IMG/VR virus record: IMGVR_UViG_3300005826_000294
Coordinates: 186,001-250,000 of that record
Direction: 5' to 3' (one strand)
Length of the DNA stretch: 64,000 nt
The notes under the pieces were generated by a model. The model did not search any database. It was not told the DNA's origin and worked only from the letters and a program-made list of their open reading frames with translations. The position numbers and the translations under genes were made by a program. Every line of letters begins with the position of its first letter. The first letter of the stretch is position 1. Positions 6,962 through 54,848 of the stretch are shown one piece after another.

Positions 6962-8197
6962 TTAACTAGACATATTTCTTTCAATAATATCAATTACTTC
7001 TCTTAATGTTTCTGGGCTACTTGTAAGTTTTCCATCCTGAATGATGTTTGACTCTATAGGTTTTTTAATTTTTCCCATCCTATGTAATTGTTGAAGAGCC
7101 TTATTTAAATCAATTTCTAATGCTTCTAAATCTGTATAATTCTTTCCTAAAAATGTAAAAGAATTTAGTTTAGATTCTATATCTAGTCTGTTTAAAACAT
7201 TCTGTTCAATTCTTTTTGCGTTAAAAACATACTTTTTTGCTTCTTTAAATGATTCTTCCAAATCTTCAAATTTTTCATCAATTAATTTATAATCTTCAAA
7301 TCCAAAAAAATCTTTTGTTTCTCCCCACATTTTTGAGAAAAAACCAGAACGCTGTTGAATGTCTTCACGAATAGACATAATAAGAAGCTTAATACGATTA
7401 AAAACAGGATCTAATTCTGAAATTGTTTGAGCATATTTGTCTGAACCTTCCTTGGTACTTAAGTCCATTTGATTTAATTTCGGTAAAAACGAAGCAATTA
7501 ATTTTGCTGCAGCATTTGCAGATTTAGAACGATTACTTTTATCTATTAATGCTTCATATAAATCTACCATATCTGTTTTTAAATTTTCTTGTTTGCTTGT
7601 AAGGTTTTTCCCAAACATTTTAACTCCAGCAAAACCTCCAGATAATAATATAAGATTTTTCCCAAACATTTTAGCTCCAGATAATAATAAAGGAAGTAAA
7701 AACCAACCAGATTGTTTGTGTAGATGGCCCTTAGAAAAAGGGTAAGATATTTTCTTAATTGCTTCATCAACTCTACTTGCTTCTTTTATTTTTCCTTCAT
7801 CTTCTAAAGAATTAGCAAGTTTAACAAGTTCTGATATGATATTCGCATGAACACCAATAAGAGTACCATGTGGCATTTTAGTAGCAATTTCAATATCTTT
7901 TTCTTGTTGTTCTTTAATATTTTCTACCAAACTTCCATTGCCCATACTATGTACGGGAGTACTTTCTTTGGCCATCCACGCCTGCTCTGGGTGAGCTTTT
8001 TCTACAATATCTTTTGGTTCAGTTTTTAATCCATATTCTTCTGTGGGTTCATTACGAGTATATCCCTTTACGGGAGTTTCTTTTGTAGGATTGCCCACGC
8101 CTTCTTCATGTTTTAAATCAGAGTTTATAAGGCCCGACTTTTCTGCAACTTTAAGAAACTCTGACATAACTTCACTGCCATTCCATTCTCTACTCAT
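6962..8197 (-). CDS. Putative virion protein with helical-hairpin tag and a hydrophobic segment
   Basis: LVKLANSLEDEGKIKEASRVD; GWFLLPLLLSG; shares HPE..MPH-type motifs with the next large gene. Confidence 0.6.
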   Translation of the reverse strand: MSREWNGSEVMSEFLKVAEKSGLINSDLKHEEGVGNPTKETPVKGYTRNEPTEEYGLKTEPKDIVEKAHPEQAWMAKESTPVHSMGNGSLVENIKEQQEKDIEIATKMPHGTLIGVHANIISELVKLANSLEDEGKIKEASRVDEAIKKISYPFSKGHLHKQSGWFLLPLLLSGAKMFGKNLILLSGGFAGVKMFGKNLTSKQENLKTDMVDLYEALIDKSNRSKSANAAAKLIASFLPKLNQMDLSTKEGSDKYAQTISELDPVFNRIKLLIMSIREDIQQRSGFFSKMWGETKDFFGFEDYKLIDEKFEDLEESFKEAKKYVFNAKRIEQNVLNRLDIESKLNSFTFLGKNYTDLEALEIDLNKALQQLHRMGKIKKPIESNIIQDGKLTSSPETLREVIDIIERNMSS

Positions 8198-9297
8198 ATG
8201 CGTGCCTCTCCTTGTAAAAGTTTTCTTAATCTTTCTTCATCATTTGGTTTAACATTTGATTTAATATTTGGTTTCGGCATCTTTGATAAAGGTTTTTTAG
8301 GTTCAATTTTATCAATTTTAATTCCATCAACCTTTACACTTTTTAATAGAAATTTAGCTACTTGCTGAACATTTGGAGCAACAAATGACTCAAGATTATT
8401 TACAACTTCAATTGGTGCCCAGTTTAATTTTGCTATATATTTTTCTAATAATGACCAACCTGGAGCATTCTCTAAGGAAATAGGAAGTTTATCTGGATTT
8501 GCTAACCGTTGAGATCGCATAAACCCAACAGAAAAATTGGCAATTGTAGCATTTAAAAATGATATTAATGTATCTTTTACATTTTTATTAACATTATTGT
8601 AATGCTTCATATTCGGACCAATTGTAGGTTTAACAGGTTTATCTTCTTTATGCTCTGTACGATGTGTTTTCCATCCCATAAATCCTGCAACTCCAGCTCC
8701 AATCCCTAATGCTCCCATACCTTTAAGAAATATCCATATTAATTTCATAAGTAATCCAGATATTATTGTTCCTTTAGTAGAACTTTTCCAAAAACTCATA
8801 AATTTTGATATATTAGGCTTAGCAATCTTTATAATAGAATTCCCATATAAAGATACATAAAATGCTGAACGAATATCATTATCATTAAGATTTCCCTTTA
8901 TTTTCTTAATATCCGTAATTGTAGAAGAAAATACAGATTTAGTCCAAAATGATAGTTTTGATGGTAAATCCTGAAATGTTTTTAATATTGTATCAGTAAC
9001 AGATTGGGCTGCTCCCTCAGAATTAGATTGAGATAAATTCATTTCATCAATACTTGTAGATCCATTTCTTTTAAAATAATCATCAATAAGTTTACCGATA
9101 TATCCCGGACCAAATCCCATAAGTTCTGAGGCAGTAACCAACATACCTATAATCCAACCAAATTTAAAAGCATAACCAGTTCCTAATGTACTAAAAATAG
9201 TTTCAAATGGTCTATTTTTAAAATCAAATTGATCTTTGACTTGTTCTAATATTGAAGAAACATTAGCTTGTTTTATAATAAGGTCATCATATTTCAT
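8194..9297 (-). CDS. Putative virion/ejection protein with hydrophobic Gly-rich segments
   Basis: FGWIIGMLV and LIWIFLKGMGALGIGAGVAGFMG segments; 4-nt overlaps with neighbours. Confidence 0.5.
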   Translation of the reverse strand: MKYDDLIIKQANVSSILEQVKDQFDFKNRPFETIFSTLGTGYAFKFGWIIGMLVTASELMGFGPGYIGKLIDDYFKRNGSTSIDEMNLSQSNSEGAAQSVTDTILKTFQDLPSKLSFWTKSVFSSTITDIKKIKGNLNDNDIRSAFYVSLYGNSIIKIAKPNISKFMSFWKSSTKGTIISGLLMKLIWIFLKGMGALGIGAGVAGFMGWKTHRTEHKEDKPVKPTIGPNMKHYNNVNKNVKDTLISFLNATIANFSVGFMRSQRLANPDKLPISLENAPGWSLLEKYIAKLNWAPIEVVNNLESFVAPNVQQVAKFLLKSVKVDGIKIDKIEPKKPLSKMPKPNIKSNVKPNDEERLRKLLQGEARI

Positions 9298-12200
9298 TCT
9301 ATAATTCCTAATTGTTGTCCCATAGATAAAAGTGCTCTATTAAACATAGAAAGAAATTCCTCAAGATCTTTTAAGGTTCCAGGATCTTTACGCCTAAGGT
9401 TTCCAGAAACTTTATTAAGACCAGCTAAAATCTCAGCTACTCTTCTCCTAAGACGATTAAAATAAATTTTTCCTGCTTCTTCATATGTATTCGGAAGTTT
9501 TCTTGGACCACCTTTTTGACTTAATTGAGAATAAGCAAATGTCTTAAAATTATCGACAGTACTAAACCAAGTTCCACTCGGTAAATAGTTTATAGCCTGT
9601 TTTATATCATCAAGATTATCTAAAGTTTTTGGATAAAATAACCCTTTAATCCCAATATTTTTTGAGCCTGCTTGAAAATCAGTTCTTTTTTGATATGGCT
9701 CCTCTGTAACATTTGTTTCCCTACCTGAAATATTTTTTTCCATGCCTGGAACATTAGACTTTTGCCAAGGATAAGAAAAATGTTTCTCTTCAGTAAATGG
9801 ATCTAATAGTTCATTTTTCTGTCCAGATGGAGATTTTTTTTCCTGTAATAAATATTTTTGAAATTGATTGGTCAAATAATCAATTTGTTTTCTCCATTTT
9901 TGAACATATTCTGGAGCTTTCTTCACTATATTATATTCCTTATCATATGTATAGTCTAAAAGTTCCTTTAAATATTGTAAAGCACTACTGGGAGGAAAAG
10001 GTCTAGATCCTAATTTACCTTGCATATAATTTACAAATACTCTTGGATTTAATAAAGCTTCTAATGGAACATTAATTCCAGATTCAAGAGGAATAAAAGA
10101 AGTTCCTTCATTTTTTTTTCTTGAAGATATATAATTTATAATTTTAGAAGCATAAGATATTGAATTAGGTCTATCTCCATGTCTTTGACCTTTTGGATTA
10201 ACAATAGGTTTCATATGTTTTACTACAACAACAGGTGCTCCAGACAAAAAATTATTCCAAGCAATAGCAGTTTTTGGCCCCCAATATCCATCTATTGTTC
10301 CAGGATCAAAACCAGCACCTTTAAGGGCTTCTTGTAACTTTATAACATTTTCATCATTTTCTGGTTTTATATATTTTTTCTTCTGTTTTGAAACAGGAGT
10401 TGTTGTATTTTCTTTTGTAGTTTCTAAACTAAAACTAGGAGCACCATTACCAGCATTTTTAATAGAAGATGATTTAGTTATACTCTTTAATTTATTAAAA
10501 TAATCAGTTAATTCCTTAATGCTTTCATCATTAAGTTCAACATGATATGATTTATTAGGAGTACTTGTTACATTATATTTTCGTTCGTCTAACCATTTTG
10601 CTAATTTATCAACTATTTCATTTCCTTTTATTCTATCTCCTTTACCTAATTTTTCTGATATGATTTGATGATTTTTAGTAATAAAATTACCAAAATTATT
10701 TAAAATTTCTACATATTTGTTAATTCTATTTTTTTTAAATTTAATTCTTTCTTGTTTAAGTCTCTCTATAACATTCGTTGGTTTTTTAGATTCAGTTTCT
10801 GGTTTTATTAATTCTAACTTACCATTAAGTAATTTAATATATACTAATAATGATACATGATTGTCCTGATCAGATGAACCTAAAGCCTCATACATATTTA
10901 TTCCAATAGTTTTTGTTATTATATAAACAATGGCTTTTTTTAATAAAGCAACATAATTAGGTTTATTTAATGCAGTTTTAAAAAAACTTAAAGCAGTAGA
11001 ATAAATATGTTTAAGTTTTTGTCCCTCAGTATTATTTTCAAACAAATCTCTATCAATTACCTCTTTAAGTTTATTAATTATATCATTAGTTTTATTATAT
11101 ATATGTTGTGGTATAACATTTGGACTTGCCATTTTAATAGAATCGTATTCTACGGTCTTAGTCGAGACTTTCAAATCTTTGGAGTTAGCCGTCTCGGGAA
11201 CTATACTCCTATTTCCGAAAGGGAGCAACTCCGCGATTGTTTTATCAACAATCTGAGCTGCCTTTACATTTCCCTCATTCTCTAACTTATTGGCTGTAGC
11301 AATTAATTTTCCAATTACTTCAGCGACTTTACCTGTAGGAGCCTTTGTTGCTTTATCAACAACTTTCTTGTGCTCTTCTACAATAGTTTCAACCTTTCCA
11401 CCTTCATCAGAGGCAGGAGCCAATGTTGGACCACCACCAGGATGTGCCTGATTAATTAAATCATCACCAGTTTCTCCAGTAATATCATATAATTTTCCCG
11501 CAGCCTCGGAATATAATTTTGTTTGCCTATCAACAGCAATAGCGGCCTTTTCATTTCCTAACTTATCTAAATCATTAGCAAGAGAAATAAGCTCATTTAC
11601 AACAGAAGCAGTAACATCATCGGCTTTTGCCCAATCGGGAATTTTAAGATCCATAGAAGGCTCTCTGGTTTCTTTTTGTTCTCTAATTTGTTTAAGAGCA
11701 TTCATATATTGACTTCTATCTTTAATAGGACCACGAAGACCTTCACGTCTTAATTGTCTCATAACTGCTAAATGTTCACCTTCAGTTACTCCCTCAGGAA
11801 TACCTTTTACTTTATACTTGGTTTTCCAGTTTGGAGAAACAACAATATCACCAGGTTGTTGGCCAGGAATTTTATTTAAGGTACGATTTATTGTATCTTC
11901 AGTCATTTTATTAACATCAACATTTATAGGTTGATCAAGTTTAGGCATAGATTCAGCCCAATCAGCATAAGGATCCTTTGCATCATTGCTCATCATTTCA
12001 ACATTTCTTTTTCCTTCTGGATGCGTTTTCCATAAATCCATATTAGGACCTTTATCTTTCATCTCTGGTTCCTTTGTTAAAATTTTTTCTAAAGTTTTCA
12101 AACCATCTTCCCAAAGAGAAGCACTTCCCTCTGGAGCATGAATTTTACTTCTAACATCACTAATTTGTGGAATAAATTTTGAATAAGAATTTACAAAGTT

Positions 12201-12458
12201 ATCATCCATTAATACATTTCGTATAGCATCTAATGCGTTTTTTGAATTTGTTCCAAAAATTCCATCAACTTCTATAGGAACAAGAAGATCCAAAACAGGA
12301 TTAAATGATTTTAGATATTCTCCAACACGATTAATTAATTTTTGAATACTTTCAGCAAGAGTTCCTTTAAACATGGCTTCCTTTAGGGTCCACCCCTTTT
12401 CTTTGGCTATTTTATAAAATTCATCCATCCAAGATCCACCAAGATTAATATTTCGCAT
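9294..12458 (-). CDS. Large virion protein with two peptidoglycan-binding-like motifs and two helical-hairpin tags
   Basis: VDGIFGTNSKNAL and VIKLQEALKGAGFDPGTIDGYWGPKT (PG_binding_1-like). Confidence 0.65.
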   Translation of the reverse strand: MRNINLGGSWMDEFYKIAKEKGWTLKEAMFKGTLAESIQKLINRVGEYLKSFNPVLDLLVPIEVDGIFGTNSKNALDAIRNVLMDDNFVNSYSKFIPQISDVRSKIHAPEGSASLWEDGLKTLEKILTKEPEMKDKGPNMDLWKTHPEGKRNVEMMSNDAKDPYADWAESMPKLDQPINVDVNKMTEDTINRTLNKIPGQQPGDIVVSPNWKTKYKVKGIPEGVTEGEHLAVMRQLRREGLRGPIKDRSQYMNALKQIREQKETREPSMDLKIPDWAKADDVTASVVNELISLANDLDKLGNEKAAIAVDRQTKLYSEAAGKLYDITGETGDDLINQAHPGGGPTLAPASDEGGKVETIVEEHKKVVDKATKAPTGKVAEVIGKLIATANKLENEGNVKAAQIVDKTIAELLPFGNRSIVPETANSKDLKVSTKTVEYDSIKMASPNVIPQHIYNKTNDIINKLKEVIDRDLFENNTEGQKLKHIYSTALSFFKTALNKPNYVALLKKAIVYIITKTIGINMYEALGSSDQDNHVSLLVYIKLLNGKLELIKPETESKKPTNVIERLKQERIKFKKNRINKYVEILNNFGNFITKNHQIISEKLGKGDRIKGNEIVDKLAKWLDERKYNVTSTPNKSYHVELNDESIKELTDYFNKLKSITKSSSIKNAGNGAPSFSLETTKENTTTPVSKQKKKYIKPENDENVIKLQEALKGAGFDPGTIDGYWGPKTAIAWNNFLSGAPVVVVKHMKPIVNPKGQRHGDRPNSISYASKIINYISSRKKNEGTSFIPLESGINVPLEALLNPRVFVNYMQGKLGSRPFPPSSALQYLKELLDYTYDKEYNIVKKAPEYVQKWRKQIDYLTNQFQKYLLQEKKSPSGQKNELLDPFTEEKHFSYPWQKSNVPGMEKNISGRETNVTEEPYQKRTDFQAGSKNIGIKGLFYPKTLDNLDDIKQAINYLPSGTWFSTVDNFKTFAYSQLSQKGGPRKLPNTYEEAGKIYFNRLRRRVAEILAGLNKVSGNLRRKDPGTLKDLEEFLSMFNRALLSMGQQLGIIE

Positions 12459-12818
12459 TTATTTTACCTCCAGCAATAAAGCTTTAAGTTCCTGTATTGT
12501 TCTCTCTACCCTATATGCGGCTTTAATATTAGATAAATCTGCTAATTGTTCAGCTATTTTTTCTAAACCATAAATAAGTCTATTATTATTAGCAACTATC
12601 ATTTCTTTTTCAAAAGAATTATCAAGCAATTCATCGGCCGCATCGACAAGTTTCTTTTCATCACTCCAATCCTCCTCTTCCCACTTATTTTCATCTGTGG
12701 TAATAGGTTGATATGCCTCTGCTGAAGGATTTAAAACGTCATCAGCAAATTTTTCAAGTTCTTGCATAACTTCGCTCTTTTCCCATATAGCTCGATCTTC
12801 TCTTGAAAAAGTCATCAT
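12459..12818 (-). CDS. Small acidic protein with helical-hairpin tag
   Basis: LEKIAEQLADLSNIKAAYRVERTI. Confidence 0.6.
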   Translation of the reverse strand: MMTFSREDRAIWEKSEVMQELEKFADDVLNPSAEAYQPITTDENKWEEEDWSDEKKLVDAADELLDNSFEKEMIVANNNRLIYGLEKIAEQLADLSNIKAAYRVERTIQELKALLLEVK

Positions 12819-14649: not shown

Positions 14650-14658
14650 TTTTACTCC

Positions 14659-14862
14659 TTATTTATTAGGGCTTTTTGTCTTACCATAACGCTTATAAAT
14701 CTGAACACGTTTTTTATCACTTAATTCATTATCCCAAATATCCCCAACAATCTTATTAACTCTTTTCATAGAATAATCTGGGTTTTTCTTTTTTACTTCT
14801 TCTTTCATCTCATCAAACCATCCCTTTGGAGCTTTATGCTCAGCACCTACAGGACTTTTCTC
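14659..14862 (-). CDS. 67-codon -1-frame continuation of 14847..15557 (frameshift extension or homopolymer error)
   Basis: Open frame EKSPVGAEHKAPKGWFDEMKEEVKKKNPDYSMKRVNKIVGDIWDNELSDKKRVQIYKRYGKTKSPNK*; its TAA overlaps the GGAG RBS of the next gene. Confidence 0.65.
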   Translation of the reverse strand, partial: EKSPVGAEHKAPKGWFDEMKEEVKKKNPDYSMKRVNKIVGDIWDNELSDKKRVQIYKRYGKTKSPNK

Positions 14863-15557
14863 TTTTTTTTTTGAGCTAATTTTGTTAAAGCTTCATCAAT
14901 TAAATTAGCAATATCATTAAAACCTTTTCCATCAAGGATATCAGCTACTTTAACTAAATGATTCATAGCAAAATCGGCAGCAACCATAGACTTTGCATCC
15001 CATGCCATCTCTACGGGCTCTTCATCTTCATCCTTCTTTAATTGACCACAAAGAGCACAAGAATCATCAGCAGGAACTACGGTTCCAGGCATCCCGTGAC
15101 CTTTTAGTTCATTAAACTTAGAATTGGCAGCTTCTTCAGCAGATTCGGCCTGGGCATCAGACATTCCAGGTTTATATGTATTTAATAATTCCATTACTTG
15201 ATTAGCATCTTCAGCTCTCGACAATAAATCCATAAATTGAGAATATGGAGTCTGATCTGAAGCATCATTAGTCATAGGAATAGTAGTCCCTGGACCACCC
15301 TTTGCAGATTCTCTTATTCTTACAGCTTCTTCAATAGTTCCGGGAAAAGAATTTTCCTCAGCTTCTAATTTTGCTTGATATTTATTCCAAAACTCATCAG
15401 CTTTTCTTGGATTTGTTTCAATAACTCTTTTAAACTCAACTAATACAGGACCACCTGCTTTTTTATCAAAAGCCTGTTTTACAAAATCTGCTCCAAGAGC
15501 ATTAGCCATGGCTTCAGCAATTTCGTTTGCGTTTTCAATCTTAAGACTGGTAGACAT
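14847..15557 (-). CDS. Virion-associated protein with helical-hairpin tag; ends just after an A10 run
   Basis: LVKVADILDGKGFNDIANLIDE; CAA AAA AAA AAG near the stop. Confidence 0.65.
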   Translation of the reverse strand: MSTSLKIENANEIAEAMANALGADFVKQAFDKKAGGPVLVEFKRVIETNPRKADEFWNKYQAKLEAEENSFPGTIEEAVRIRESAKGGPGTTIPMTNDASDQTPYSQFMDLLSRAEDANQVMELLNTYKPGMSDAQAESAEEAANSKFNELKGHGMPGTVVPADDSCALCGQLKKDEDEEPVEMAWDAKSMVAADFAMNHLVKVADILDGKGFNDIANLIDEALTKLAQKKKRKVL

Positions 15558-15574: not shown

Positions 15575-15964
15575 TTATTTGCAATCTTTACAATCTGTTA
15601 ATGTAGCAAATTTTTGAAGAGTTTTATCTAAAATATTGGCAACTTCTACAAAACCTTTTTGATCAAGATCATCGGCAATTTTTGCTATACATTGTATGGC
15701 GAATTCAATTCCAGCTGTTTTATCATCAGCTTGAGAACCACATTTTGATTTAACTACATAATCATAAATTTTCTTTTTCTGGAAATCTTCGACAGGAACC
15801 CTAGCAGCAGAAGGATCATGATTTTTTAATGTTTCACAATCTAATGTATCTAAAAAATTTTTATACTCATCTAAAGAAATATATGTAATTTTAGCAGTCT
15901 TTTCAAGACTTTTTTCCATATCATAAAGAAGTCCATCATAATTTTTAGAATATGTATTAACCAT
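15575..15964 (-). CDS. Small protein with helical-hairpin tag
   Basis: IAKIADDLDQKGFVEVANILDK. Confidence 0.6.
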   Translation of the reverse strand: MVNTYSKNYDGLLYDMEKSLEKTAKITYISLDEYKNFLDTLDCETLKNHDPSAARVPVEDFQKKKIYDYVVKSKCGSQADDKTAGIEFAIQCIAKIADDLDQKGFVEVANILDKTLQKFATLTDCKDCK

Positions 15965-22520: not shown

Positions 22521-22751
22521 CTAGAAAGGATCGCCTGTATCAAAAAAGAATGGACTAACAGTCATACCGCCTATTGGTTCCTCTGGCTTTGTATCTCCAC
22601 GTAATCCAACAATATTTACAACGGAACTTACATCGCATTCCTCATTTTCTTCATCTTCGAGTTCAGATAGAATTTGATACACATCCATTGCTGAATGTAT
22701 AAATCCATGACTAATTAACTCATTAAAAAGATTGGAAATTATCTTTTTCAT
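22521..22751 (-). CDS. Hypothetical small protein
   Basis: ATGA overlap with upstream gene; degenerate hairpin tag. Confidence 0.55.
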   Translation of the reverse strand: MKKIISNLFNELISHGFIHSAMDVYQILSELEDEENEECDVSSVVNIVGLRGDTKPEEPIGGMTVSPFFFDTGDPF

Positions 22752-45892: not shown

Positions 45893-46767
45893 TATTTTCC
45901 CCATTTATATACAACTTTAAATCCAGCGTCTTCAAAAATTTTAAGCTTTTTTATAGTATTGTCATATAATTCTCCAAAAGTTTTTCCAATTATAGGATGT
46001 TTATCATTTCTATTGTATTTATCTGGATGTCCATGCCAAAAGTATCCAAAATATTCATAAATAATATTGTTTGTTTTATCAAACCCATCAACAAAAAATT
46101 TTTTATTGTTAATATTAATATAAACTTCTGTTTGAATAATTCCAATACTTTCAATCCATTTTTTACCTGATTTTGATATTCTTTTAGAACATAAAGAACA
46201 TCCTCTTCCACGAACTCTATCTTTTATTTTCGCTATCCATTTATGATTATTTTTACATTTCCAATGGACTACTTTATGACTTCCAGGTCTTACAGAATCA
46301 GGTTTAAAATTTTTTTCATCCCATTCTTTTGATAAAGTAGGATATAAATCTTTTAAAGAATTCCCATATCCTACTTTTCTACCATTACAATAAGGACAAT
46401 TACTATTTTTTCTATGTTTTACAGATTTTTCCCAAGAATGCCCAAATTTACATTTCCACCATACTTTTTTATAACTTCCTGAACTAATACATTCAGGATC
46501 AATAATATTTTTATCATAATCCCACTCTTTTAATAAATTACTATAAATTATTGAATCTTCTTTGGAAATTTTTACTCTAGTACAGTATGGACAACCATGG
46601 CCTTTGATTCTACTATAAACAATTGCTTCCCATTTATGATTGTTTTTACAAATCCATTTAATTCTTGATCTACTAACTAAAGATGTTATATCATAATTAT
46701 TACTTAAATCATATTCTTTTAATAGTTCAGGATATTCATTTAAGTTTATCATTAATTCTTTGAACAT
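45892..46767 (-). CDS. Free-standing putative endonuclease: three DUF4379-like repeats + Vsr/EDxHD-like nuclease
   Basis: KEWD...W.C...H.W...CP.C; VDGFD....IYEYFGYFWHG. Confidence 0.75.
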   Translation of the reverse strand: MFKELMINLNEYPELLKEYDLSNNYDITSLVSRSRIKWICKNNHKWEAIVYSRIKGHGCPYCTRVKISKEDSIIYSNLLKEWDYDKNIIDPECISSGSYKKVWWKCKFGHSWEKSVKHRKNSNCPYCNGRKVGYGNSLKDLYPTLSKEWDEKNFKPDSVRPGSHKVVHWKCKNNHKWIAKIKDRVRGRGCSLCSKRISKSGKKWIESIGIIQTEVYININNKKFFVDGFDKTNNIIYEYFGYFWHGHPDKYNRNDKHPIIGKTFGELYDNTIKKLKIFEDAGFKVVYKWGK

Positions 46768-48020
46768 TCATCAAATACTTTACTATTTCCATCATCATCT
46801 TCAGTAACAATAATAGTTATATATTCTCCTGCATGATTATCATATTCTTCACCAAGATCTTCTTTATTTGATTTTAAACAATATTTAATATAAGATTCTA
46901 AATCTTTATTTTTTACATCTAATTCATCATTAAATTCTTTACGAAGCCTATCCTGAATTGCTGGAAGAGAAGCAAATCCTCCACTAGTTCTACAAGCATT
47001 TTGAATAAATTCATCCAATCCTTCATATTTTTTAAATTTTTCTGGAAGTTTTTTTACTTCTTTATCTTTCGCCATTTGTAAAGATTTAATTTGCTCATTA
47101 ATAATATCAGCCTCTTTTAACATTCCTTCATTTATCAATGATTTAGAAAAAGCAACAAGTCTAACAATTTTTTGAGCGTTTTTCTCTGCTTTTTCAGCAT
47201 CTTCTTTTGTTTTATGAATTGTCCCTGGTGGATGATTTGGAGGACTATAAATGGTATAAAGTTTTAAGGGTTCTGTGTCTGAAGCATTAATAACATTGTG
47301 TTCTGTTCCAGATGGAATAATCAATGCTCCTCCAGCTTTAATACGTTTCTTTTTACCATTTAAAACAAATATAGCTTCTCCAGCCTCAATACGAAAGAAC
47401 TGATCAACAAATTTATGAACCTCAATTCCAAGATCTTCATTTGCTTTCACACTCATTAAAACTAATTGAGAATGTTCCCCAGTAAATAAAACTTTACGAA
47501 AATATTTATTTTTTAAAGTTTGCTCTTCTAATGGCCCAGAATATCCATTAATTTTTTTAGCAATCCTTCTAATATTAGCAGACGCTTTTTTTGTTTCTTT
47601 TTCTATTTCTTTTTCACTATCTTCTAACTTATCATAATATTTTCCACCATTTCCATTTTTGAAATCTTTTGATTCCTCTAAATGATCTTTTGCTATTTCT
47701 TTTGAAAGATCTTTATCAGTGGTATGTTCCATTTCTACTTTAATACCTTTTCCTAATTGATCTTTATCATATCTACTATCAGGTTGGTTATCAGCATTTC
47801 CACCAGGTATTTGATCTTTTGCCGTTTTTTCAATATTATCAAGACCAACTCGTTTTCTTAATTCTTCAACACGAGCTTCAACAGCCTCTCCATCATTTCT
47901 TAATTTAAACATTTCACGAATATCATCAAAAGGATTTCCCTCTTTTTGTAATTCATTGTCAGCAAAAGACTTTAACCAATTAGGTAAAGCACTTGGTTTA
48001 GCATATTCTCTATCAGACAT
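46752..48020 (-). CDS. Virion protein with DUF5661-like domain, cupin domain and helical-hairpin tag
   Basis: GIKVEMEHT..KEIAKDHL..YY; FRKVLFTG..SQLVLM...EVH..DQFF...G.EHNVIN...LKLYTIYSPP.H. Confidence 0.8.
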   Translation of the reverse strand: MSDREYAKPSALPNWLKSFADNELQKEGNPFDDIREMFKLRNDGEAVEARVEELRKRVGLDNIEKTAKDQIPGGNADNQPDSRYDKDQLGKGIKVEMEHTTDKDLSKEIAKDHLEESKDFKNGNGGKYYDKLEDSEKEIEKETKKASANIRRIAKKINGYSGPLEEQTLKNKYFRKVLFTGEHSQLVLMSVKANEDLGIEVHKFVDQFFRIEAGEAIFVLNGKKKRIKAGGALIIPSGTEHNVINASDTEPLKLYTIYSPPNHPPGTIHKTKEDAEKAEKNAQKIVRLVAFSKSLINEGMLKEADIINEQIKSLQMAKDKEVKKLPEKFKKYEGLDEFIQNACRTSGGFASLPAIQDRLRKEFNDELDVKNKDLESYIKYCLKSNKEDLGEEYDNHAGEYITIIVTEDDDGNSKVFDECSKN

Positions 48021-48032
48021 AATTATCTCCTA

Positions 48033-49045: not shown

Positions 49046-49054
49046 ACTCTCCCA

Positions 49055-49558: not shown

Positions 49559-49581
49559 AGTTTTCCCCCTATTGTGGGATT

Positions 49582-50073
49582 TTAATACTTAACTATTTTT
49601 TCTAAAACTTTTATAGAAGTTTCTTTTATTAATTCATATACTTTATATCCAACTAAAGAAAATAAACCTAGAAAAAGATTTCTACTAGCATCATTATCAC
49701 TATAAAATCCTAAAGGAAAAGCATATAATCCAGAAAGCCCTAATCCAGAAAAACTTTGAGGATAAAGAGGACTTCCAGAAAAAGTTGGGGATTTCATTCC
49801 AGCACCAGTATCACCAAAATCACAATTCACTACTTTTTGATCATCCATAATGTCTGAAGCATATAAGCATCTATTATCTGTTTTATAATAAATATATACT
49901 CTTTTATTAGCTTTTTCAACAGCTCCTCTTTTATCCTTAGATATAGATTCTAATGGACACATATGAGTAATAGAATCTCCAGCATGATGACAGGCCTCAA
50001 TAATAGGCAAACCAAAAGGACATTTCCCATCACCCTTATCTATATCTGATCTGATCCAAGAAAATTTTTTCAT
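49582..50073 (-). CDS. Cys-rich hypothetical protein (start 50073 by ATGA overlap)
   Basis: CPFGLPI..AC..AG...C. Confidence 0.55.
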   Translation of the reverse strand: MKKFSWIRSDIDKGDGKCPFGLPIIEACHHAGDSITHMCPLESISKDKRGAVEKANKRVYIYYKTDNRCLYASDIMDDQKVVNCDFGDTGAGMKSPTFSGSPLYPQSFSGLGLSGLYAFPLGFYSDNDASRNLFLGLFSLVGYKVYELIKETSIKVLEKIVKY

Positions 50074-50780
50074 TTCTTTTCCTTTAACGATTTCCAATAT
50101 TTTATAAAATCTATTACTGCTTTACTAGAAGCATCTGAATCATTAGCATTCTGAGATTTTATAAATTGTAAAATAGATTTAAAAGAATCATCACAAGACC
50201 ATATATGTTTTTCTAAATTAGCAGTTTTAGGAAATTTTACAGGTTTAGATGGAAATTCCTTATAATCTATTCTATTTTTTATATCTATATCACTTGGAGA
50301 ATTTTGAATAGATCTTCTCCATTTAATCCAATCTGGTATTCCGCCTGGAAATCTTTCCATAAACTCTCTCATATTCCCTAAAAATGGAGAATATTTATGA
50401 ATATCATAATTTATATTAGGTTCCCATATCGGAGGCCCAGGCCCCCAATGAGCCTGCTTTTTTATACATTTATGAAAATCACTCCATTTAGTATTATGAT
50501 CTTTTTTAATTTTTCTTCTCCATTCAATCCAATCTTTAATACCACCAGGAAACTTCTTCATAAATTCTGATACACTGCCAAAATAAGGAGAATTTTCCCA
50601 TTCAGCATAATCCATATTCTTTCGCCATGGATTAGGAGTTTTTCCATCATTATCTGGAACATAATGAGAATGCTTTATAATAAAAGAATTATAATATACA
50701 CAAAGACGATTTAATCCTTCTATATCATTAACTTTATCTAATTGCTCAGCAAGTTTAAGAAATCTTAATAATCTTCTCAT
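50070..50780 (-). CDS. Hypothetical protein with two ~45-aa repeats
   Basis: SP..G...EFM..FPGGI.DWI.WRR twice. Confidence 0.65.
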   Translation of the reverse strand: MRRLLRFLKLAEQLDKVNDIEGLNRLCVYYNSFIIKHSHYVPDNDGKTPNPWRKNMDYAEWENSPYFGSVSEFMKKFPGGIKDWIEWRRKIKKDHNTKWSDFHKCIKKQAHWGPGPPIWEPNINYDIHKYSPFLGNMREFMERFPGGIPDWIKWRRSIQNSPSDIDIKNRIDYKEFPSKPVKFPKTANLEKHIWSCDDSFKSILQFIKSQNANDSDASSKAVIDFIKYWKSLKEKK

Positions 50781-50789
50781 TGTAATCTC

Positions 50790-51557
50790 CTATCCATCAA
50801 GTAGATTTTGAACCATGCGGTTTTTTGCTAATTCAAGAGTCATCATCCTACTTAAAGGAATAATTGGAAGTAATTTGTATTTTATTAATAAATTCAAAGC
50901 TTTTTTAGAATCCATATCAAGCATTTGATTTATTTGTTTTTTTACATGATTTGTTGATAAATTTGAAATGCTTCCTCTAAACTTTATTAGAGCATCTTCT
51001 AAATCTGGTTTTGGAGTTAAATCAAATTTTAAAATCATCTTTAAAGCTCTTAATATTCTTCTTGGGTCATAACCAATCGTGAACTCAGGATCTACTGGAG
51101 TTCTTAAAACTTTATTTTTTATATCTTTAAAAGCTTTCCCTGTAATATCATATGGTTCTTGTTTAAGATCCATAGGTTGTAATAATGTATTTATAGTAAA
51201 ATCTCTACTATATATTTCTTTTTCTAAATCAGATGGGTCTTTAATATTCATTTTTTTTAAAACATCTTCTATATTCGGCAAATTAAAATTATTTGAAAAA
51301 TCTAATCTAATATTTTTAAAATCTATAGAAGAATGTCCATCATCATATGATCTAAAAGAAGCATCATTCCAAACTCTACTTGCCGACATTGCTAAAGCAA
51401 ATGAACCTTTATCACCTGTTGTAATATCAATATCTTTAATACTATTAATAACATTAAAAGCTTTATCTCTGGGCAAACCTCCAACAATATATGGTTTAGA
51501 AATATCATAATCTTTTGATATTTTATCTAATGTTTGAAGCAACTCAGATAATTTCAT
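50790..51557 (-). CDS. CCA-adding enzyme / poly(A) polymerase-family nucleotidyltransferase
   Basis: YIVGGLPRD, DIDI, RDFTINTL, DPRRILRA. Confidence 0.85.
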   Translation of the reverse strand: MKLSELLQTLDKISKDYDISKPYIVGGLPRDKAFNVINSIKDIDITTGDKGSFALAMSASRVWNDASFRSYDDGHSSIDFKNIRLDFSNNFNLPNIEDVLKKMNIKDPSDLEKEIYSRDFTINTLLQPMDLKQEPYDITGKAFKDIKNKVLRTPVDPEFTIGYDPRRILRALKMILKFDLTPKPDLEDALIKFRGSISNLSTNHVKKQINQMLDMDSKKALNLLIKYKLLPIIPLSRMMTLELAKNRMVQNLLDG

Positions 51558-53158
51558 TATCCCTCCGGAGTTTTTGGAACTTCTGGTGTTGGGGTTTCAG
51601 GTGTAGGAGTTTCTGGAGTTTTAGAAATTCGAGGAAATATTGGTGCTTCTTCTTCAGTTACTTCAAAAGCAGTTTCCTCTGGCCCTTTACCTTCAAGTTC
51701 TCCCATTTCTATATTTGGAGGATTAGTTTTACTTTCTTCTTCATCCTCCTTTAATCCACCTTTTAATTTGTTAATAACCTTCTCAATTCTCGAACCAACA
51801 TAAATATTTAATTCCAAAGCTTTAGCCTGTGCTTCTCCCAATTCTGGAAAATGAGATGCTATATTCAATGCATCAAGCATCATATCTGCTTTTGATAATC
51901 CACGAATAAATTCTCTTTCACGAAATTTTTGTGATAATGGATTTAAAATATCTAATACATCTTGTACTGTTGCTGAAGAAAATGGATTTTCTTGTGAAAC
52001 TTTTTCTGGTTCAGGATTTGGTAATGGTTCTTCTGGAGGTAAAGGTTCTTCAACACCAGCTGGAGGAGCACCTAGTTCTTCTGAAGATGGGCCAATTTCA
52101 GGCATCTCAGCCATTTCAGTATTAGGCATTTCATTTGTATCTGTAGATGGAGGCATCATTTCTGATGATACATCCCCTTTCGGAACATCCTCAGATACAG
52201 GTTTATCATAATCTTCAAACTCTCTACCAGTAAGCGCTTTTTCAATTTCCGAGGTTATATCTCCTGGAGGTGCAGCGATTTTTCTTAACTCATTAGCACC
52301 TTCAATAAATCCATTATATTCCCATATAGATGCTGTTCGTATAATAACATCCTGCATCGAAGCAGTTGTTCTCATCATTGTTATTTCTCGTTTTAAATCC
52401 GATAATCCTTGATGAAGTCTATTATATACTTGATCAGGCCAAACATGAACAAAATTATAAAGCAATCTCTCTGCCGAATTTAATCTACTTAATAAAGTTT
52501 TTTTATAATCATCCAAAGTTTTCTCTTTTTTAATAATTGGAGGATCTGGTTGTTCAATTTCTTCCTGATTATCATTTAGAAGTTGTTGAAGATCTAAATA
52601 AGAAGCATTCTTAATATTATATTTTTCATAATCACCTTTTTCATAATATCGTGCCCATGCTTCAAAATCATTTTTTTCCATAGGACTCCATTCCTCCGTT
52701 ATTCGTTCAACAGCATTTTTACGATTTTCTCCACTTTTAGTTGCTATATATATCTGGGCAAGTGCTTGAACCCACTTTGAAATATCTCTTTTTGGTTTTA
52801 AGTTACTTTCCCCAACCCCTGATATATTTGGATAAGCGACCTTTTTCCTGTTCAATTCTCTCAAAGATTTAAGAACGGCCGCACGAATTTTAGTTAAATC
52901 AATATCATCTAAACCTTTTAAATAATTAAAAGATTTTACTATAACTGGTTTTTTATCTTTAATGTTATACCCAAATTCCTTACATATATCATCACAAAAA
53001 TGATCAAGATAAAATGCAAGATTTCGTTCTTGATCATTACTAACATTAAGATCAGATAAAAATTGAGTATCATTATCAAGTAAATCTTTTAATTCTTGAG
53101 TAAAACCATTATCGGATAAGTCCTGTATTAAATCATCTACATAATTAATCTCACTCAT
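51557..53158 (-). CDS. Acidic head-cluster protein (likely start 53158, MSEINY)
   Basis: Upstream part of track ORF overlaps previous gene; Pro/Glu-rich linker; degenerate hairpin tag. Confidence 0.6.
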   Translation of the reverse strand: MSEINYVDDLIQDLSDNGFTQELKDLLDNDTQFLSDLNVSNDQERNLAFYLDHFCDDICKEFGYNIKDKKPVIVKSFNYLKGLDDIDLTKIRAAVLKSLRELNRKKVAYPNISGVGESNLKPKRDISKWVQALAQIYIATKSGENRKNAVERITEEWSPMEKNDFEAWARYYEKGDYEKYNIKNASYLDLQQLLNDNQEEIEQPDPPIIKKEKTLDDYKKTLLSRLNSAERLLYNFVHVWPDQVYNRLHQGLSDLKREITMMRTTASMQDVIIRTASIWEYNGFIEGANELRKIAAPPGDITSEIEKALTGREFEDYDKPVSEDVPKGDVSSEMMPPSTDTNEMPNTEMAEMPEIGPSSEELGAPPAGVEEPLPPEEPLPNPEPEKVSQENPFSSATVQDVLDILNPLSQKFREREFIRGLSKADMMLDALNIASHFPELGEAQAKALELNIYVGSRIEKVINKLKGGLKEDEEESKTNPPNIEMGELEGKGPEETAFEVTEEEAPIFPRISKTPETPTPETPTPEVPKTPEG

Positions 53159-53912
53159 CTTCTGCCTCAACATCTTGTATTTTTTCTGCCAATGCCTGAG
53201 TATTGTTATGCATCTCAGATATACTCTCATGATTTTTCTTTCTATATGATAATTCAGCAATTTTATTACTTAATCTATGCATGAATCTAGTTGCTGTTTC
53301 ATGGTCCATTTCTTCTTCTATAGTTTCCCTTACAGCACTACGTATTGCGGCCATTTGATCTTCAATTATGGTAATATTAACATTTGTTTCTATTGTTTTA
53401 TCAGCAATCTTATCAACATATTTTGCCCATTGTTGTATTGTTGTTGTCCATCCAGCAAAATATTTATGTAAATTTGCTTCTTCATTTACAGAAAGTGTTC
53501 CCTCTGCTGCTCTGTCAAATAGATCTTCAACTCTCATTTTCACTGTTACTAAAAGTTCTTGTAATTCTTGGCGAATATCTACATGAAGATTTGCCGCCTT
53601 TTCAACAGCTTGACGAAAAGCAGGAATTCTACGTAATTTGCTTTCTTCTTTCTTTTTATCTTTAATTTCTTTTTTCTCTCTTGTTGCTTGCTTTACAGAA
53701 TCTAAAACATCTCCTTCTAAATTTAAATGCTGTTTTCTAAATTTTTGTAAAGTTGTTGGAGTAACATGTAATTTTTTATCTTTGGGATGTAGATTTTTAA
53801 GTTCTTTAGCTACAGCTCTAACCCCATGCCCATTTGTAAGCATGCGAACAATAAGATTTTTATTTGGATGACCTAAAATTTTAGAAAAAGATGACATAAT
53901 TCTCCATTTCAT
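53151..53912 (-). CDS. HTH protein, possible terminase small subunit (likely start 53897)
   Basis: N-terminal HTH-like GHGVRAVAKEL, helical body, TNVNITI tail; position upstream of terL cluster. Confidence 0.35.
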   Translation of the reverse strand: MKWRIMSSFSKILGHPNKNLIVRMLTNGHGVRAVAKELKNLHPKDKKLHVTPTTLQKFRKQHLNLEGDVLDSVKQATREKKEIKDKKKEESKLRRIPAFRQAVEKAANLHVDIRQELQELLVTVKMRVEDLFDRAAEGTLSVNEEANLHKYFAGWTTTIQQWAKYVDKIADKTIETNVNITIIEDQMAAIRSAVRETIEEEMDHETATRFMHRLSNKIAELSYRKKNHESISEMHNNTQALAEKIQDVEAEDE

Positions 53913-53964
53913 AAAAAACGCCCAATAGTGGCTCGTCTAGAATAAATACGAGTTCTATCGGGCG
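53913..53964 (-). terminator. Two-stem hairpin followed by T6
   Basis: CGCCCGATAG..CTCGT-11nt-ACGAG..CTATTGGGCG TTTTTT. Confidence 0.55.
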
Positions 53965-53972
53965 AGAATGAC

Positions 53973-54848
53973 TTAATTAATTCTATTTAATATACTTTGA
54001 CGACTATCATAAACTCTCATAGGAATACCACCATAATTACTAGTTGTTGGTGTTTGTGCCGATATACTCCCGCCAGGAACTCTCTGTCCTTGATAATTTT
54101 TATAACCTATTTCATAATTATAAACTTTTCCATCTATTGGACATTGATATATTCTTTCAGAAACTCTTGTAGCTTGTGTTCCATTATGATCTGGACAATA
54201 TCTTGTAGATAAATGCCCTTCATTAGGAGGTTGAATCGGATTACTATTTAATTCTTCTTCTGCTATAATATCTAATTCATTAGCTAAAAGATGAGCCCCT
54301 AATGTATCTGAAAATTCAGCTAATTTTATAATATCCATAATACGTTCTGACTTTTTTTGCTGAATTTGCTCCATTCTATTTGTTCTTTCAATAAGTCCAA
54401 ATACTAATTTTCTTAAATCCATTAATTCTGCGTTTAATCCCTCAAGAGTTAATTCAGAAGCATTCTTTAGAAAATTATCAATCTTATTTGCAAGACCTTT
54501 ATAACCTTGTTTATCTAAAGCATCAGCTAATTTAATAAGATCATTAGTTAAAATTTGAGCTTTTGCCCGTGTTGGATAAGATTGTAATTGAGCAATAAAT
54601 TTTGGTCCTATTTGCTTATTAAACTTATTTACAAAATTTCCAAAATAAGTATTATAATTAATAAGATCTTCAAATAAGTTATATATTTGTGATTTTATCG
54701 CAAAATACTCATCTTTAGTTATTCTTCCATTTACCATACTAGAATATAAACCAGATAATTTACGTGTATATTGTTGATAAGAATAAGCAGCCTGAGATAA
54801 TGTATTAAATACATTTTCCATTTCATTAACTAATTGAGTATTAACCAT
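53973..54848 (-). CDS. Protein with two helical-hairpin tags and C-terminal Zn ribbon
   Basis: LIKLADALDKQGYKGLANKID; IIKLAEFSDTLGAHLLANELD; CPDH...CPID. Confidence 0.65.
   Translation of the reverse strand: MVNTQLVNEMENVFNTLSQAAYSYQQYTRKLSGLYSSMVNGRITKDEYFAIKSQIYNLFEDLINYNTYFGNFVNKFNKQIGPKFIAQLQSYPTRAKAQILTNDLIKLADALDKQGYKGLANKIDNFLKNASELTLEGLNAELMDLRKLVFGLIERTNRMEQIQQKKSERIMDIIKLAEFSDTLGAHLLANELDIIAEEELNSNPIQPPNEGHLSTRYCPDHNGTQATRVSERIYQCPIDGKVYNYEIGYKNYQGQRVPGGSISAQTPTTSNYGGIPMRVYDSRQSILNRIN

What the first reader, a model, noticed from the sequence alone, without database searches (positions are those of the whole stretch)
7755..54550. A ~25-aa helical-hairpin tag shared by at least 10 unrelated head-cluster proteins
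Seen: consensus L(V/I)K(L/I)A(D/N)xL(D/E)xxGxxxxAxx(I/V/L)D in 6962..8197 (~7755-7835), twice in 9294..12458 (~11230-11320, ~11515-11600), 12459..12818, 14847..15557, 15575..15964, 27603..28277, 38055..39581, 46752..48020, 51557..53158 and twice in 53973..54848; partial in 50070..50780 and 22521..22751. The host proteins otherwise share nothing, and the motif is absent from recA, dnaG, cysC, dnaJ and the endonucleases. It contains a K-x-A core. Established: T4 internal proteins use a short capsid-targeting sequence. Inference: a modular packaging/docking tag that recruits cargo to the scaffold or inner capsid wall, or oligomerises an inner body.
Basis: partly seen in the sequence, partly recalled or inferred. 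Interest (0 to 1): 0.8.

Follow-up and report, generated by a model that had tools for sequence, protein, structure and literature searches.

The report
Shared helical-hairpin module on phage head proteins
A conserved 32-residue helix-turn-helix module, in no domain database searched, sits on many otherwise unrelated proteins of the head-assembly gene block of a clade of uncultured huge phages, and most likely docks proteins into the assembling capsid, though no experiment shows this yet.

Summary
A profile built only from copies in related phages finds 7 strong copies (18.7-49.6 bits) in 6 window proteins, where 20 shuffled proteomes reach at most 4.5 bits. Weaker copies in 46752..48020, 12459..12818, 27603..28277 and a second one in 53973..54848 are supported by orthologues. 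The copy claimed in 51557..53260 is degenerate and not significant. Those claimed in 50070..50780 and 22521..22751 are not supported.

The unit is about 32 aa: h-I-x-x-L-[IV]-x-L-A-[ND]-x-L-D-x-x-G-x-x-x-x-A-[DN]-x-[VI]-D-x-h-[IL]. AlphaFold2 models it as a helix-turn-helix hairpin, and two tandem copies look TPR-like.

An exhaustive search of 1.84 billion proteins gives 1467 clusters. All ten hits looked up are metagenomic. Hits fall on about 50 distinct backbones, with 1-3 copies each, and 66 of 293 copies start at residue 2-5.

The window is part of a 301.7-kb phage contig whose nearest cultured relative by capsid protein is Bacillus phage G, whose head block lacks the motif. In 24 motif-positive relatives, 54 motif genes lie upstream of the capsid gene and 1 downstream, on the tail side.

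The capsid-docking function is inferred from position and carrier type (confidence about 0.45).

The parts
7733..7846 (-). Hairpin copy in 6962..8197 (aa118-155). This 411-aa protein is followed by a hydrophobic, membrane-like segment and lies two genes upstream of the capsid gene.
   Evidence: 33.4 bits with the window-free profile. Orthologues carry the motif in 20 related loci.
11496..11609 (-). First hairpin copy in 9294..12458 (aa284-321). This is a 1054-aa protein with a PG_binding_1 domain.
   Evidence: 27.0 bits. PG_binding_1 at aa702-731. 31 orthologous clusters each carry two copies.
11211..11324 (-). Second hairpin copy in 9294..12458 (aa379-416).
   Evidence: 23.3 bits.
12471..12584 (-). 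Diverged hairpin copy in 12459..12818 (aa79-116), with S in place of the turn G.
   Evidence: 6.6 bits with the first seed profile. Orthologues in L027, L037 and L050 score 12-31 bits.
14862..14975 (-). C-terminal hairpin copy in 14847..15557 (aa195-232).
   Evidence: 19.7 bits. Orthologues carry it.
15593..15706 (-). C-terminal hairpin copy in 15575..15964 (aa87-124).
   Evidence: 18.7 bits.
39432..39545 (-). N-terminal hairpin copy in 38055..39581 (aa13-50). This largely disordered 508-aa protein lies just downstream of the portal gene, after a 90-aa ORF.
   Evidence: 49.6 bits. The copy is conserved at the N-terminus of every orthologue examined.
47064..47177 (-). Weak hairpin copy in the cupin-domain protein 46752..48020 (aa282-319). 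This is the last non-endonuclease gene before the terminase gene; the HNH endonuclease ORF 45892..46767 lies between them.
   Evidence: 8.0 bits against a shuffle maximum of 4.5. Orthologues score 22-49 bits. Cupin_2 domain.
54444..54557 (-). First hairpin copy in 53973..54848 (aa98-135).
   Evidence: 29.1 bits. AlphaFold2 gives helix 93-113, a turn, then helix 117-130.
54246..54347 (-). Second, weaker hairpin copy in 53973..54848 (aa168-201).
   Evidence: 5.8 bits. It aligns with the invariant or nearly invariant D/G/A/D columns of 48 family members. AlphaFold2 gives helix 168-182, a turn, then helix 186-201.
27879..28097 (-). Two degenerate hairpin remnants in 27603..28277 (about aa61-91 and aa101-133).
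   Evidence: Not significant alone (0.2 bits; 6.2 bits with the sister-clade profile). The protein is homologous (E 1.6e-14) to P0021, which has two strong copies. The second remnant was read directly from the sequence.
52268..52363 (-). Hairpin-like stretch in 51557..53260 (about aa300-331), a possible degenerate relative.
   Evidence: Conserved among orthologues, but D+9 is R. Scores below zero in the window. The orthologue in L021/L023 scores 11-14 bits.
12387..12440 (-). A second, distinct shared motif at the N-terminus of 9294..12458 (aa7-24): S-h-M-x-E-F-x-K-I-A-x-E-K-G-W.
   Evidence: Conserved in 28 orthologues.
8111..8182 (-). The same N-terminal motif in 6962..8197 (aa6-29).
   Evidence: 11.2 bits with a profile built from 9294-family orthologues only, against a shuffle maximum of 5.1.
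16202..20263 (-). Prohead protease fused to a long charged, scaffold-like tail (1353 aa). Candidate docking partner.
   Evidence: phrog_18299 head maturation protease. Homologue of phage G gp19, E 1.5e-32, with a C-terminal match to gp21. K/E-rich tract and internal repeats read from the sequence. Motif genes cluster around its orthologues in L111-L113.
39834..44042 (-). Portal protein with intein-like insertions (context).
   Evidence: phrog_16240 portal protein. Intein_splicing, Hint and LAGLIDADG_3 domains.
44054..45904 (-). Large terminase subunit (context).
   Evidence: tblastn to annotated terminases. GpA_ATPase in an orthologue.
1665..6126 (-). Major capsid protein gene in four pieces. 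It marks the downstream boundary of the motif-bearing block.
   Evidence: The intact orthologue L042:9488-10525 matches phrog_2522 major head protein, E 6e-76. The pieces were mapped by tblastn.

Best explanation
The motif is a portable helix-turn-helix module of about 32 residues with TPR-like geometry.

Origin (shown and inferred). It probably arose in the 9294-type protein. In the sampled 9.5 kb upstream of the capsid gene, a sister subclade carries it only in that protein, in a variant form. In the window's subclade it has spread to many unrelated proteins encoded between the replication genes and the major capsid gene.

Likely function (inferred). I think it is a docking 'sticker'. Its hydrophobic face, with a conserved polar rim (N/D-6, D-3, D/N+6, D+9), would bind one common partner in the assembling procapsid core. 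The best candidate partner is the protease-scaffold fusion protein 16202..20263. Other hairpins are an alternative partner. Binding would incorporate or hold together the carrier proteins inside the head:
- membrane-like and peptidoglycan-binding putative ejection proteins (6962, 9294);
- small adaptor proteins made almost only of hairpins;
- enzymes such as a cupin protein and, in a relative, a superoxide-dismutase/phosphoesterase fusion.
Proteins with two or three copies separated by disordered linkers would act as cross-linkers.

Status of each step. Shown: the motif is real, conserved, modular and predicted as a hairpin, and it is restricted to one clade and to the head block. Inferred: the binding partner, the packaging role and any later cleavage.
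For: Reality and independence:
- A profile with no window sequence in it gives 18.7-49.6 bits, against a shuffle maximum of 4.5.

Discrete module:
- Information content is confined to positions -15 to +16 around the turn G. L-11, A-7, L-4, D-3, G0, A+5 and D+9 are each conserved in more than 90% of 293 copies, and the flanks carry no signal.
- Flanks are richer in disorder-promoting residues (0.62) than the motif itself (0.49).
- 66 of 293 copies begin within the first 5 residues.

Structure:
- AlphaFold2 gives helix-turn-helix for both copies in 53973..54848 (mean pLDDT 79).
- It gives four helices for a 74-aa protein made of two tandem copies. That model's best PDB and Swiss-Prot structural matches are mostly TPR proteins, at TM about 0.5.

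Modularity:
- 1467 clusters at E<=1e-3.
- Among the top 150, with motifs masked, 54 components in all: 48 made of database hits (two of them the 53973 and 9294 families) and 6 window-only singletons.
- Carriers include cupin, PG-binding, zinc-ribbon and SOD/CPD domains.

Restriction to the head block:
- On the window's own contig, about 101 kb was examined. Hits occur only between window 6.9 and 54.8 kb.
- In 24 motif-positive relatives, 54 motif ORFs lie in the 192 kb upstream of the capsid gene and 1 in the 189 kb downstream.
- There are none in five relatives' 20-kb loci covering the replication-side region around and upstream of DnaJ/RecA.
- Seven motif ORFs surround the protease-scaffold gene in L111, and one lies directly next to it in L112/L113.

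Long-term retention:
- The motif is kept in orthologues whose remaining sequence has diverged to 27-38% identity.

Support by analogy only:
- In phage G, the endolysin-like gp22 and the small membrane protein gp25, which occupy syntenic positions, were detected in virion proteomics.
- T4 and SPN3US use N-terminal propeptides to target internal head proteins.
Against: - There is no proteomic, structural or genetic evidence that any motif-bearing protein is in a virion.
- The nearest cultured relative's head block has no copy.
- The two largest candidate cargo proteins in the block, 29464..38019 and 22748..25801, have no convincing copy (at most 6 bits). The tag is therefore not a universal ticket.
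- In the sister subclade, the other proteins encoded in the sampled 9.5 kb upstream of the capsid gene show no copy, yet that phage presumably still builds its head.
- No conserved protease cleavage motif flanks the hairpin.
- Being encoded near head genes is weak evidence for the carriers upstream of the terminase (53973, 46752). Their block also holds a tRNA nucleotidyltransferase.
- Only about a third of one genome was scanned.
Confidence: 0.45

Rival explanations
1. The hairpin is a general oligomerisation element. Hairpins pair into four-helix bundles and hold together a complex of ejection or internal proteins. That complex could sit in the virion, or form in the host envelope after ejection. 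The hairpin would have no role in targeting proteins into the capsid.
For: - TPR-like geometry and tandem copies.
- Many proteins carry two copies: 131 of 148 among the top hits, although that ranking favours multi-copy proteins.
- Carriers include peptidoglycan-binding and membrane-like proteins typical of ejection machinery.
Against: - Six of the nine window carriers have a single copy, so they need an intermolecular partner in any case.
- Enzymes such as the cupin protein and the SOD/CPD fusion also carry it.
- The extreme N-terminal placement in 23% of copies looks more like an address than a structural core.
- This rival overlaps with the best explanation and cannot be separated from it by computation alone.
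Confidence: 0.25
2. The hairpin is a recognition element for a processing or folding factor, either the prohead protease or the phage-encoded DnaJ-type chaperone. It would mark substrates for cleavage or folding rather than for docking.
For: - The block encodes a prohead protease, and DnaJ lies just upstream.
- Related giant phages process many head proteins.
Against: - No conserved cleavage-like residue lies at a fixed distance from the hairpin.
- Copies occur at N-terminal, C-terminal and internal positions.
- Nothing links the motif to DnaJ.
Confidence: 0.1
3. The hairpin acts after infection. It would be a host-directed binding module, carried by ejected or early proteins, that engages one host factor.
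For: - Conserved surface-type acidic residues suggest a specific ligand.
- Some carriers are enzymes that could act in the host.
Against: - The strict confinement to the late or head gene block, and the clustering around the protease-scaffold gene, are not expected for host-takeover factors.
- There is no similarity to any known host-binding domain.
Confidence: 0.1
4. The resemblance is chance or compositional similarity among amphipathic helices in an AT-rich genome.
Against: - Independent-profile scores of 18.7-49.6 bits against 4.5 bits for shuffles.
- 75 database proteins at E<=1e-10 in an exhaustive search of 1.84 billion proteins.
- Invariant polar residues at fixed spacing.
- Retention of the motif in orthologues.
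Confidence: 0.01

Closest known systems
T4 capsid-targeting sequence (CTS) of the internal proteins IPI-III and Alt
   Same: A short sequence shared by otherwise unrelated internal head proteins, thought to bind the scaffolding core so that the proteins are enclosed in the prohead (as summarised in PMC5694885). About a quarter of the copies here are at the extreme N-terminus.
   Different: The CTS is a 10-20 aa N-terminal peptide removed by gp21. The unit here is a folded hairpin of about 32 aa, mostly internal or C-terminal, often present 2-3 times, with no conserved cleavage site and no sequence similarity.
Long N-terminal propeptides of phiKZ/SPN3US ejection and inner-body proteins
   Same: Giant phages with many internal head proteins. 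The propeptides are thought to target proteins into the prohead. SPN3US gp47 has a propeptide followed by a transmembrane segment, an arrangement like that of 6962..8197, where tag and hairpin are followed by a hydrophobic segment.
   Different: Those propeptides are family-specific, about 100 aa long and cleaved at A/S/G-x-E. No common portable module has been described there. This phage is related to phage G, not to phiKZ.
Encapsulin cargo-loading peptides
   Same: A modular tag that directs diverse enzymes into an HK97-fold shell.
   Different: Encapsulin tags are short, extended C-terminal peptides that bind a pocket on the shell protein (my own knowledge, not tested here). The unit here is a helical hairpin in any position, with an unknown partner.
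Tetratricopeptide repeat (TPR)
   Same: A helix-turn-helix of about 34 aa, with small or hydrophobic residues at matching spacing (L-A..L...G....A). The tandem-copy model's best structural matches are mostly TPR proteins.
   Different: No Pfam TPR model matches, even at E<=1-10. Copies are solitary or dispersed rather than forming arrays of three or more. The invariant Asp at -3 and +9 are not TPR features.
C-terminal helix-loop-helix coat-binding domain of the P22 scaffolding protein
   Same: A small helical hairpin that mediates docking to capsid protein during procapsid assembly (my own knowledge).
   Different: The P22 hairpin is basic, unique to the scaffolding protein and not shared among cargo proteins. 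The copies here are neutral to acidic (net charge -3 to +1). No homology was detected.

Membership tests
TPR (Pfam TPR families) | Sequence match to a TPR profile at or near the curated threshold | tested here: not met
   Ten motif-containing segments at E<=10 and ten motif-rich proteins at E<=1 gave no TPR family. The only related hit was YscG, a TPR-like chaperone, at E 0.023 and below its cut-off.
TPR (Pfam TPR families) | Antiparallel two-helix repeat that stacks into a TPR-like superhelix | tested here: inconclusive
   AlphaFold2 gives helix-turn-helix units. The two-copy model's top PDB matches are TPR domains at TM about 0.45-0.55 but E>1. A profile search of PDB sequences found only weak hits to designed repeat and TPR proteins (E>=0.11).
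TPR (Pfam TPR families) | Tandem arrays of three or more repeats | tested here: not met
   Copies are single or separated by long linkers. At most three per protein, and only a few small proteins have two adjacent copies.
T4-type capsid-targeting sequence | N-terminal peptide of 10-20 residues | tested here: not met
   The unit is about 32 aa. In the window only 1 of 9 carriers has it at the N-terminus. Across the database, 66 of 293 copies are N-terminal.
T4-type capsid-targeting sequence | Followed by a prohead-protease cleavage site and removed on maturation | tested here: inconclusive
   No conserved residue pattern follows the hairpin. Actual cleavage cannot be seen from sequence.
T4-type capsid-targeting sequence | Necessary and sufficient to package a protein into proheads | not testable with these tools
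   Needs an assembly system or virion proteomics.
Encapsulin cargo-loading peptide | Short, extended C-terminal peptide that binds the HK97-fold shell protein | tested here: not met
   The unit is a helical hairpin. Only 20 of 293 copies are C-terminal. Binding could not be tested.
phiKZ-type internal head protein (Pfam phiKZ_IP) | Sequence match to the family | tested here: not met
   No Pfam hit for any carrier. The only trace is a rank-50 language-model neighbour at score 0.43 for 38055..39581, which is not evidence.

The most novel reading that the evidence does not exclude
A clade of uncultured huge phages has evolved a universal, position-independent, folded 'address module'. It would load dozens of different proteins, enzymes included, into the capsid by binding a single receptor on the protease-scaffold core. 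Bivalent hairpin-linker-hairpin proteins would cross-link this core into an internal body. In function this would be a phage counterpart of dockerin-cohesin or of encapsulin cargo loading, and a ready-made tag for packaging foreign proteins into large capsids.
Probability: 0.3. Interest if true: 0.85.

Novelty: new variant of a known kind. Interest (0 to 1): 0.66.

Why it matters
How giant phages choose and load their many internal and ejected proteins is an open question. For phiKZ-like phages only long, family-specific propeptides are known, and for phage G-like megaphages nothing is known.

A single compact module shared by about 50 protein backbones would make the question testable. One tag, a few invariant residues to mutate, and one likely partner give a direct experiment.

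If it works as proposed, it would also be a compact handle for packaging chosen proteins into large capsids. Even if the packaging role is wrong, this is a well-defined new domain family of 1467 clusters, absent from Pfam, PHROGs and the PDB, and it marks the head module of an abundant uncultured phage clade.

Tried and rejected
- Pfam scans of ten motif segments (E<=10) and of all carriers found no family for the motif.
- PHROGs gave nothing for the small carriers.
- A profile search of PDB sequences gave only insignificant designed-repeat and TPR hits.
- Foldseek of the 53973..54848 model against PDB and BFVD gave nothing significant except one uncharacterised uncultured-phage homologue.
- tblastn of a motif-rich protein against 50,697 phage records gave no real hit.
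- The phage G head block (first 50 kb) was scanned with the profile. The best score was 4.5 bits for a partial match.
- BLAST of window proteins against phage G links only the capsid protein, protease, portal and a scaffold C-terminus, so the phage G proteomics cannot be transferred by homology.
The distribution was mapped instead by anchoring on the terminase, the capsid gene and flanking genes.
- I looked for a concerted change of the tag in the sister subclade. The variant hairpin (R at -3, E at +9) occurs only in the 9294-type protein there, so that test of a shared receptor gave no answer.
- Language-model atlas searches for 53973..54848 and 38055..39581 were uninformative.
- Rfam found no group I or II intron model in the interrupted capsid gene.
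- A search of species-representative genomes for the capsid protein found only metagenome bins of mixed taxonomy, so no host can be inferred.


Full report
**Setting.**
All genes in the window run on the minus strand, and G+C is about 30%. The window is bases 186,004-250,003 of a 301,683-bp viral contig, IMGVR_UViG_3300005826_000294.
- 44054..45904 is the large terminase.
- 39834..44042 is a portal protein with intein-like insertions.
- 16202..20263 starts with a prohead protease homologous to Bacillus phage G gp19 (E 1.5e-32). It continues into about 1000 aa of charged, repetitive sequence, and its C-terminus matches phage G gp21. I read this as a protease-scaffold fusion.
- 1656..2192, a 178-aa ORF, is the C-terminal part of the major capsid protein. 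The intact 346-aa orthologue matches phrog_2522 'major head protein' at E 6e-76.
- The nearest cultured relative by capsid protein is phage G, at 52% identity. Tail genes follow the capsid gene in relatives.
The finding therefore lies in the head-morphogenesis block of an uncultured, phage G-related huge phage.

**Is the motif real?**
A strict pattern found four copies, and iterating a profile found more. To avoid circularity I built a profile from 27 copies taken only from related phages and searched the window with it.
- It gave seven hits of 18.7-49.6 bits in six proteins: 38055, 6962, 53973, 9294 (two copies), 14847 and 15575.
- Three further hits scored 5.8-8.0 bits.
- Twenty shuffled proteomes gave at most 4.5 bits.
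- In six frames, every hit of 5 bits or more lies in a minus-strand gene frame.

Orthology supports several weak copies:
- 46752..48020, whose orthologues score 22-49 bits.
- The second copy in 53973..54848, which falls in invariant or nearly invariant D/G/A/D columns of a family alignment.
- 12459..12818, whose orthologues score 12-31 bits.
- 27603..28277, a homologue of a protein with two strong copies.

The copy claimed in 51557..53260 is a conserved but degenerate hairpin-like stretch. The partial copies claimed in 50070..50780 and 22521..22751 are not supported. Window copies share 26% amino-acid and 46% nucleotide identity on average, so they are old.

**Anatomy.**
I anchored 293 database copies on the turn glycine.
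- Information is confined to positions -15 to +16. The pattern is h-I-x-x-L-[IV]-x-L-A-[ND]-x-L-D-x-x-G-x-x-[KE]-[EA]-A-[DN]-x-[VI]-D-x-h-[IL]-x-x-h-A.
- L-11, A-7, L-4, D-3, G0, A+5 and D+9 are each present in more than 90% of copies.
- The flanks carry no signal and are enriched in disorder-promoting residues.

AlphaFold2, run with a 48-sequence alignment, models both copies in 53973..54848 as helix-turn-helix (mean pLDDT 79). A 74-aa protein made of two adjacent copies is modelled as four helices. Its best structural matches are mostly TPR proteins, at TM about 0.5 but without significant E-values. No Pfam TPR model, or any other Pfam model, matches the motif. PHROGs and PDB sequence searches found nothing either. 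I therefore call it TPR-like in shape and not a demonstrable member of the TPR family.

**Distribution among proteins.**
An exhaustive profile search of 1.84 billion representative proteins gave 1467 clusters at E<=1e-3 and 75 at E<=1e-10.
- All ten hits looked up are metagenomic and carry no informative name. Curated phage genomes gave no real hit.
- I masked the motifs and clustered the top 150. Sixty components' members belong to the 53973 family, which shares an 80-aa C-terminal domain with conserved Cys/His/Cys/Asp. Thirty-two belong to the 9294 family. The rest form about 50 separate groups.
- Carriers include zinc ribbons, a cupin, a peptidoglycan-binding domain and, in a relative, a superoxide-dismutase/phosphoesterase fusion.
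- Some small proteins are little more than two hairpins, or two hairpins joined by a long acidic linker.
- Sixty-six of 293 copies start within the first five residues, and 20 end at the C-terminus.

**Distribution along genomes.**
- Gene order around the terminase is conserved in 20 relatives. The 53973-, 46752- and 38055-type genes keep their hairpins even where the rest of the protein is only 27-38% identical.
- On the window's own contig I examined about 101 kb. All hits lie between window 6.9 and 54.8 kb. There are none in the 20 kb beyond DnaJ or in the 18 kb beyond the capsid gene.
- Eighty loci were anchored on the capsid gene. In the 24 motif-positive ones, 54 motif ORFs lie in the 192 kb upstream and 1 in the 189 kb downstream. 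The nominal binomial P is 3e-15, but the loci are related, so this number is only illustrative.
- Five relatives' 20-kb loci spanning the replication-side region (their DnaJ/RecA genes and about 18 kb upstream) have none.
- For database hits with no window homologue, the context again points to the head block. Seven motif ORFs surround the protease-scaffold gene in L111, and one lies directly beside it in L112 and L113.
- A sister subclade, with about 80% capsid-protein identity, lacks canonical copies. It keeps one variant hairpin (R at -3, E at +9) near the N-terminus of its 9294-type protein only, within the sampled 9.5 kb upstream of the capsid gene. That variant profile cross-hits the window copies at 12-15 bits. 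The module is therefore probably ancestral to that protein and spread to other genes in the window's subclade.
- Phage G has no copy in its head block.

**What it most likely does.**
The following is shown. The motif is a discrete, conserved, position-independent hairpin. It has invariant acidic or polar residues beside its hydrophobic stripe. It sits on unrelated backbones, often at a terminus and between disordered linkers. It is encoded only in the head-assembly block. Six of the nine window carriers have one copy, so the partner must be another molecule.

Several carriers look like ejection or internal virion proteins:
- 9294 has a peptidoglycan-binding domain.
- 6962 and its neighbour 8194 have membrane-like hydrophobic segments.
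- They occupy the position where phage G encodes the virion-associated gp22 and gp25.

From this I infer a docking 'sticker' that binds a common partner in the procapsid core. The partner could be the protease-scaffold fusion, which has a long K/E-rich tract, or other hairpins. Binding would incorporate or cross-link internal proteins.

The points against it:
- No virion data exist for any motif-bearing phage.
- The giant multi-enzyme proteins in the block lack the tag.
- The sister subclade manages without it in the sampled region.
- No cleavage signature is present.

I put the packaging or docking role at about 0.45. A plain oligomerisation role gets 0.25, and the other readings are lower. 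Chance is excluded.

**Comparison with known systems.**
In function it resembles the T4 capsid-targeting sequence and the long propeptides of phiKZ/SPN3US head proteins, encapsulin cargo peptides, and the helix-loop-helix coat-binding domain of the P22 scaffolding protein. It meets the defining features of none of these. It is folded, about 32 aa long, position-independent, often multi-copy, neutral to acidic, and has no detectable homology to any of them. It is a new domain family that may fill a known functional niche in a new way.

Noticed in passing
window 1665-6126 (minus strand): The major capsid protein gene is in four pieces: aa1-79 at 6126..5890, about aa80-101 within 4747..4559, aa102-171 at 3414..3205, and aa172-346 at 2189..1665. 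Each of the three gaps holds a LAGLIDADG endonuclease ORF (4774..5712, 3514..4401, 2291..3046). Relatives have an uninterrupted gene of about 346 aa. Rfam finds no group I or II intron model, so the type of intervening sequence is unknown.
   Followed up: partly
window 8111-8182 and 12387-12440; marginal at 12738-12782: A second short motif, S-h-M-x-E-F-x-K-I-A-x-E-K-G-W, lies at the extreme N-terminus of 9294..12458 and 6962..8197 (11.2 bits against a shuffle maximum of 5.1) and marginally of 12459..12818 (5.9 bits). It is also conserved in the sister subclade. By position and length it is closer to a T4-type targeting peptide than the hairpin is.
   Followed up: partly
window 29464-38019 and 22748-25801: Two giant multi-enzyme proteins sit between the portal and protease genes. 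One is 2851 aa, with an ATP-dependent DNA ligase domain, a LigD 3'-phosphoesterase domain, a DJ-1/PfpI domain and a weak prim-pol match. The other is 1017 aa, with a type IB topoisomerase domain, a 2H phosphoesterase domain and a weak tyrosine-phosphatase match. Given their location they may be packaged repair enzymes, but they have no convincing hairpin.
   Followed up: no
window 16202-20263: The prohead protease is fused to about 1000 aa of charged, low-complexity sequence. This includes two near-identical segments of about 48 aa (around aa462-511 and aa603-650) and a K/E-rich tract (around aa914-990). In phage G the matching parts are separate genes, gp19 and gp21.
   Followed up: partly
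window 39834-44042: The portal gene (1402 aa, against 650-670 aa in some relatives) carries intein-like insertions: an intein splicing domain with a LAGLIDADG endonuclease, and a separate Hint module. The window also holds many free-standing HNH and LAGLIDADG endonuclease genes.
   Followed up: no
window 53973-54220 (C-terminal 80 aa of 53973..54848): A conserved domain of about 80 aa, with nearly invariant C218, H221, C236 and D239 and short beta-strands, defines a large family (58 of the top 150 motif hits). In a few members it lies N-terminal to the hairpins. No structural or family match was found.
   Followed up: partly
window 6192-6860 and 13957-14649: Two beta-rich proteins look like distant paralogues, since their orthologues in L101 align at E 0.03. 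6192..6860 occupies the position of the phage G decoration protein gp26, directly before the capsid gene.
   Followed up: no
window 50790-51557: A tRNA nucleotidyltransferase (CCA-adding type, PolyA_pol family) is conserved inside the block between the 53973-type gene and the terminase in all relatives examined.
   Followed up: no
L055-L105 (sister subclade), for example L059:2510-4087: In a related subclade the 9294-type protein has one variant hairpin, with Arg at -3 and Glu at +9 in place of the two invariant Asp. No other protein in the sampled 9.5 kb upstream of the capsid gene carries it.
   Followed up: yes
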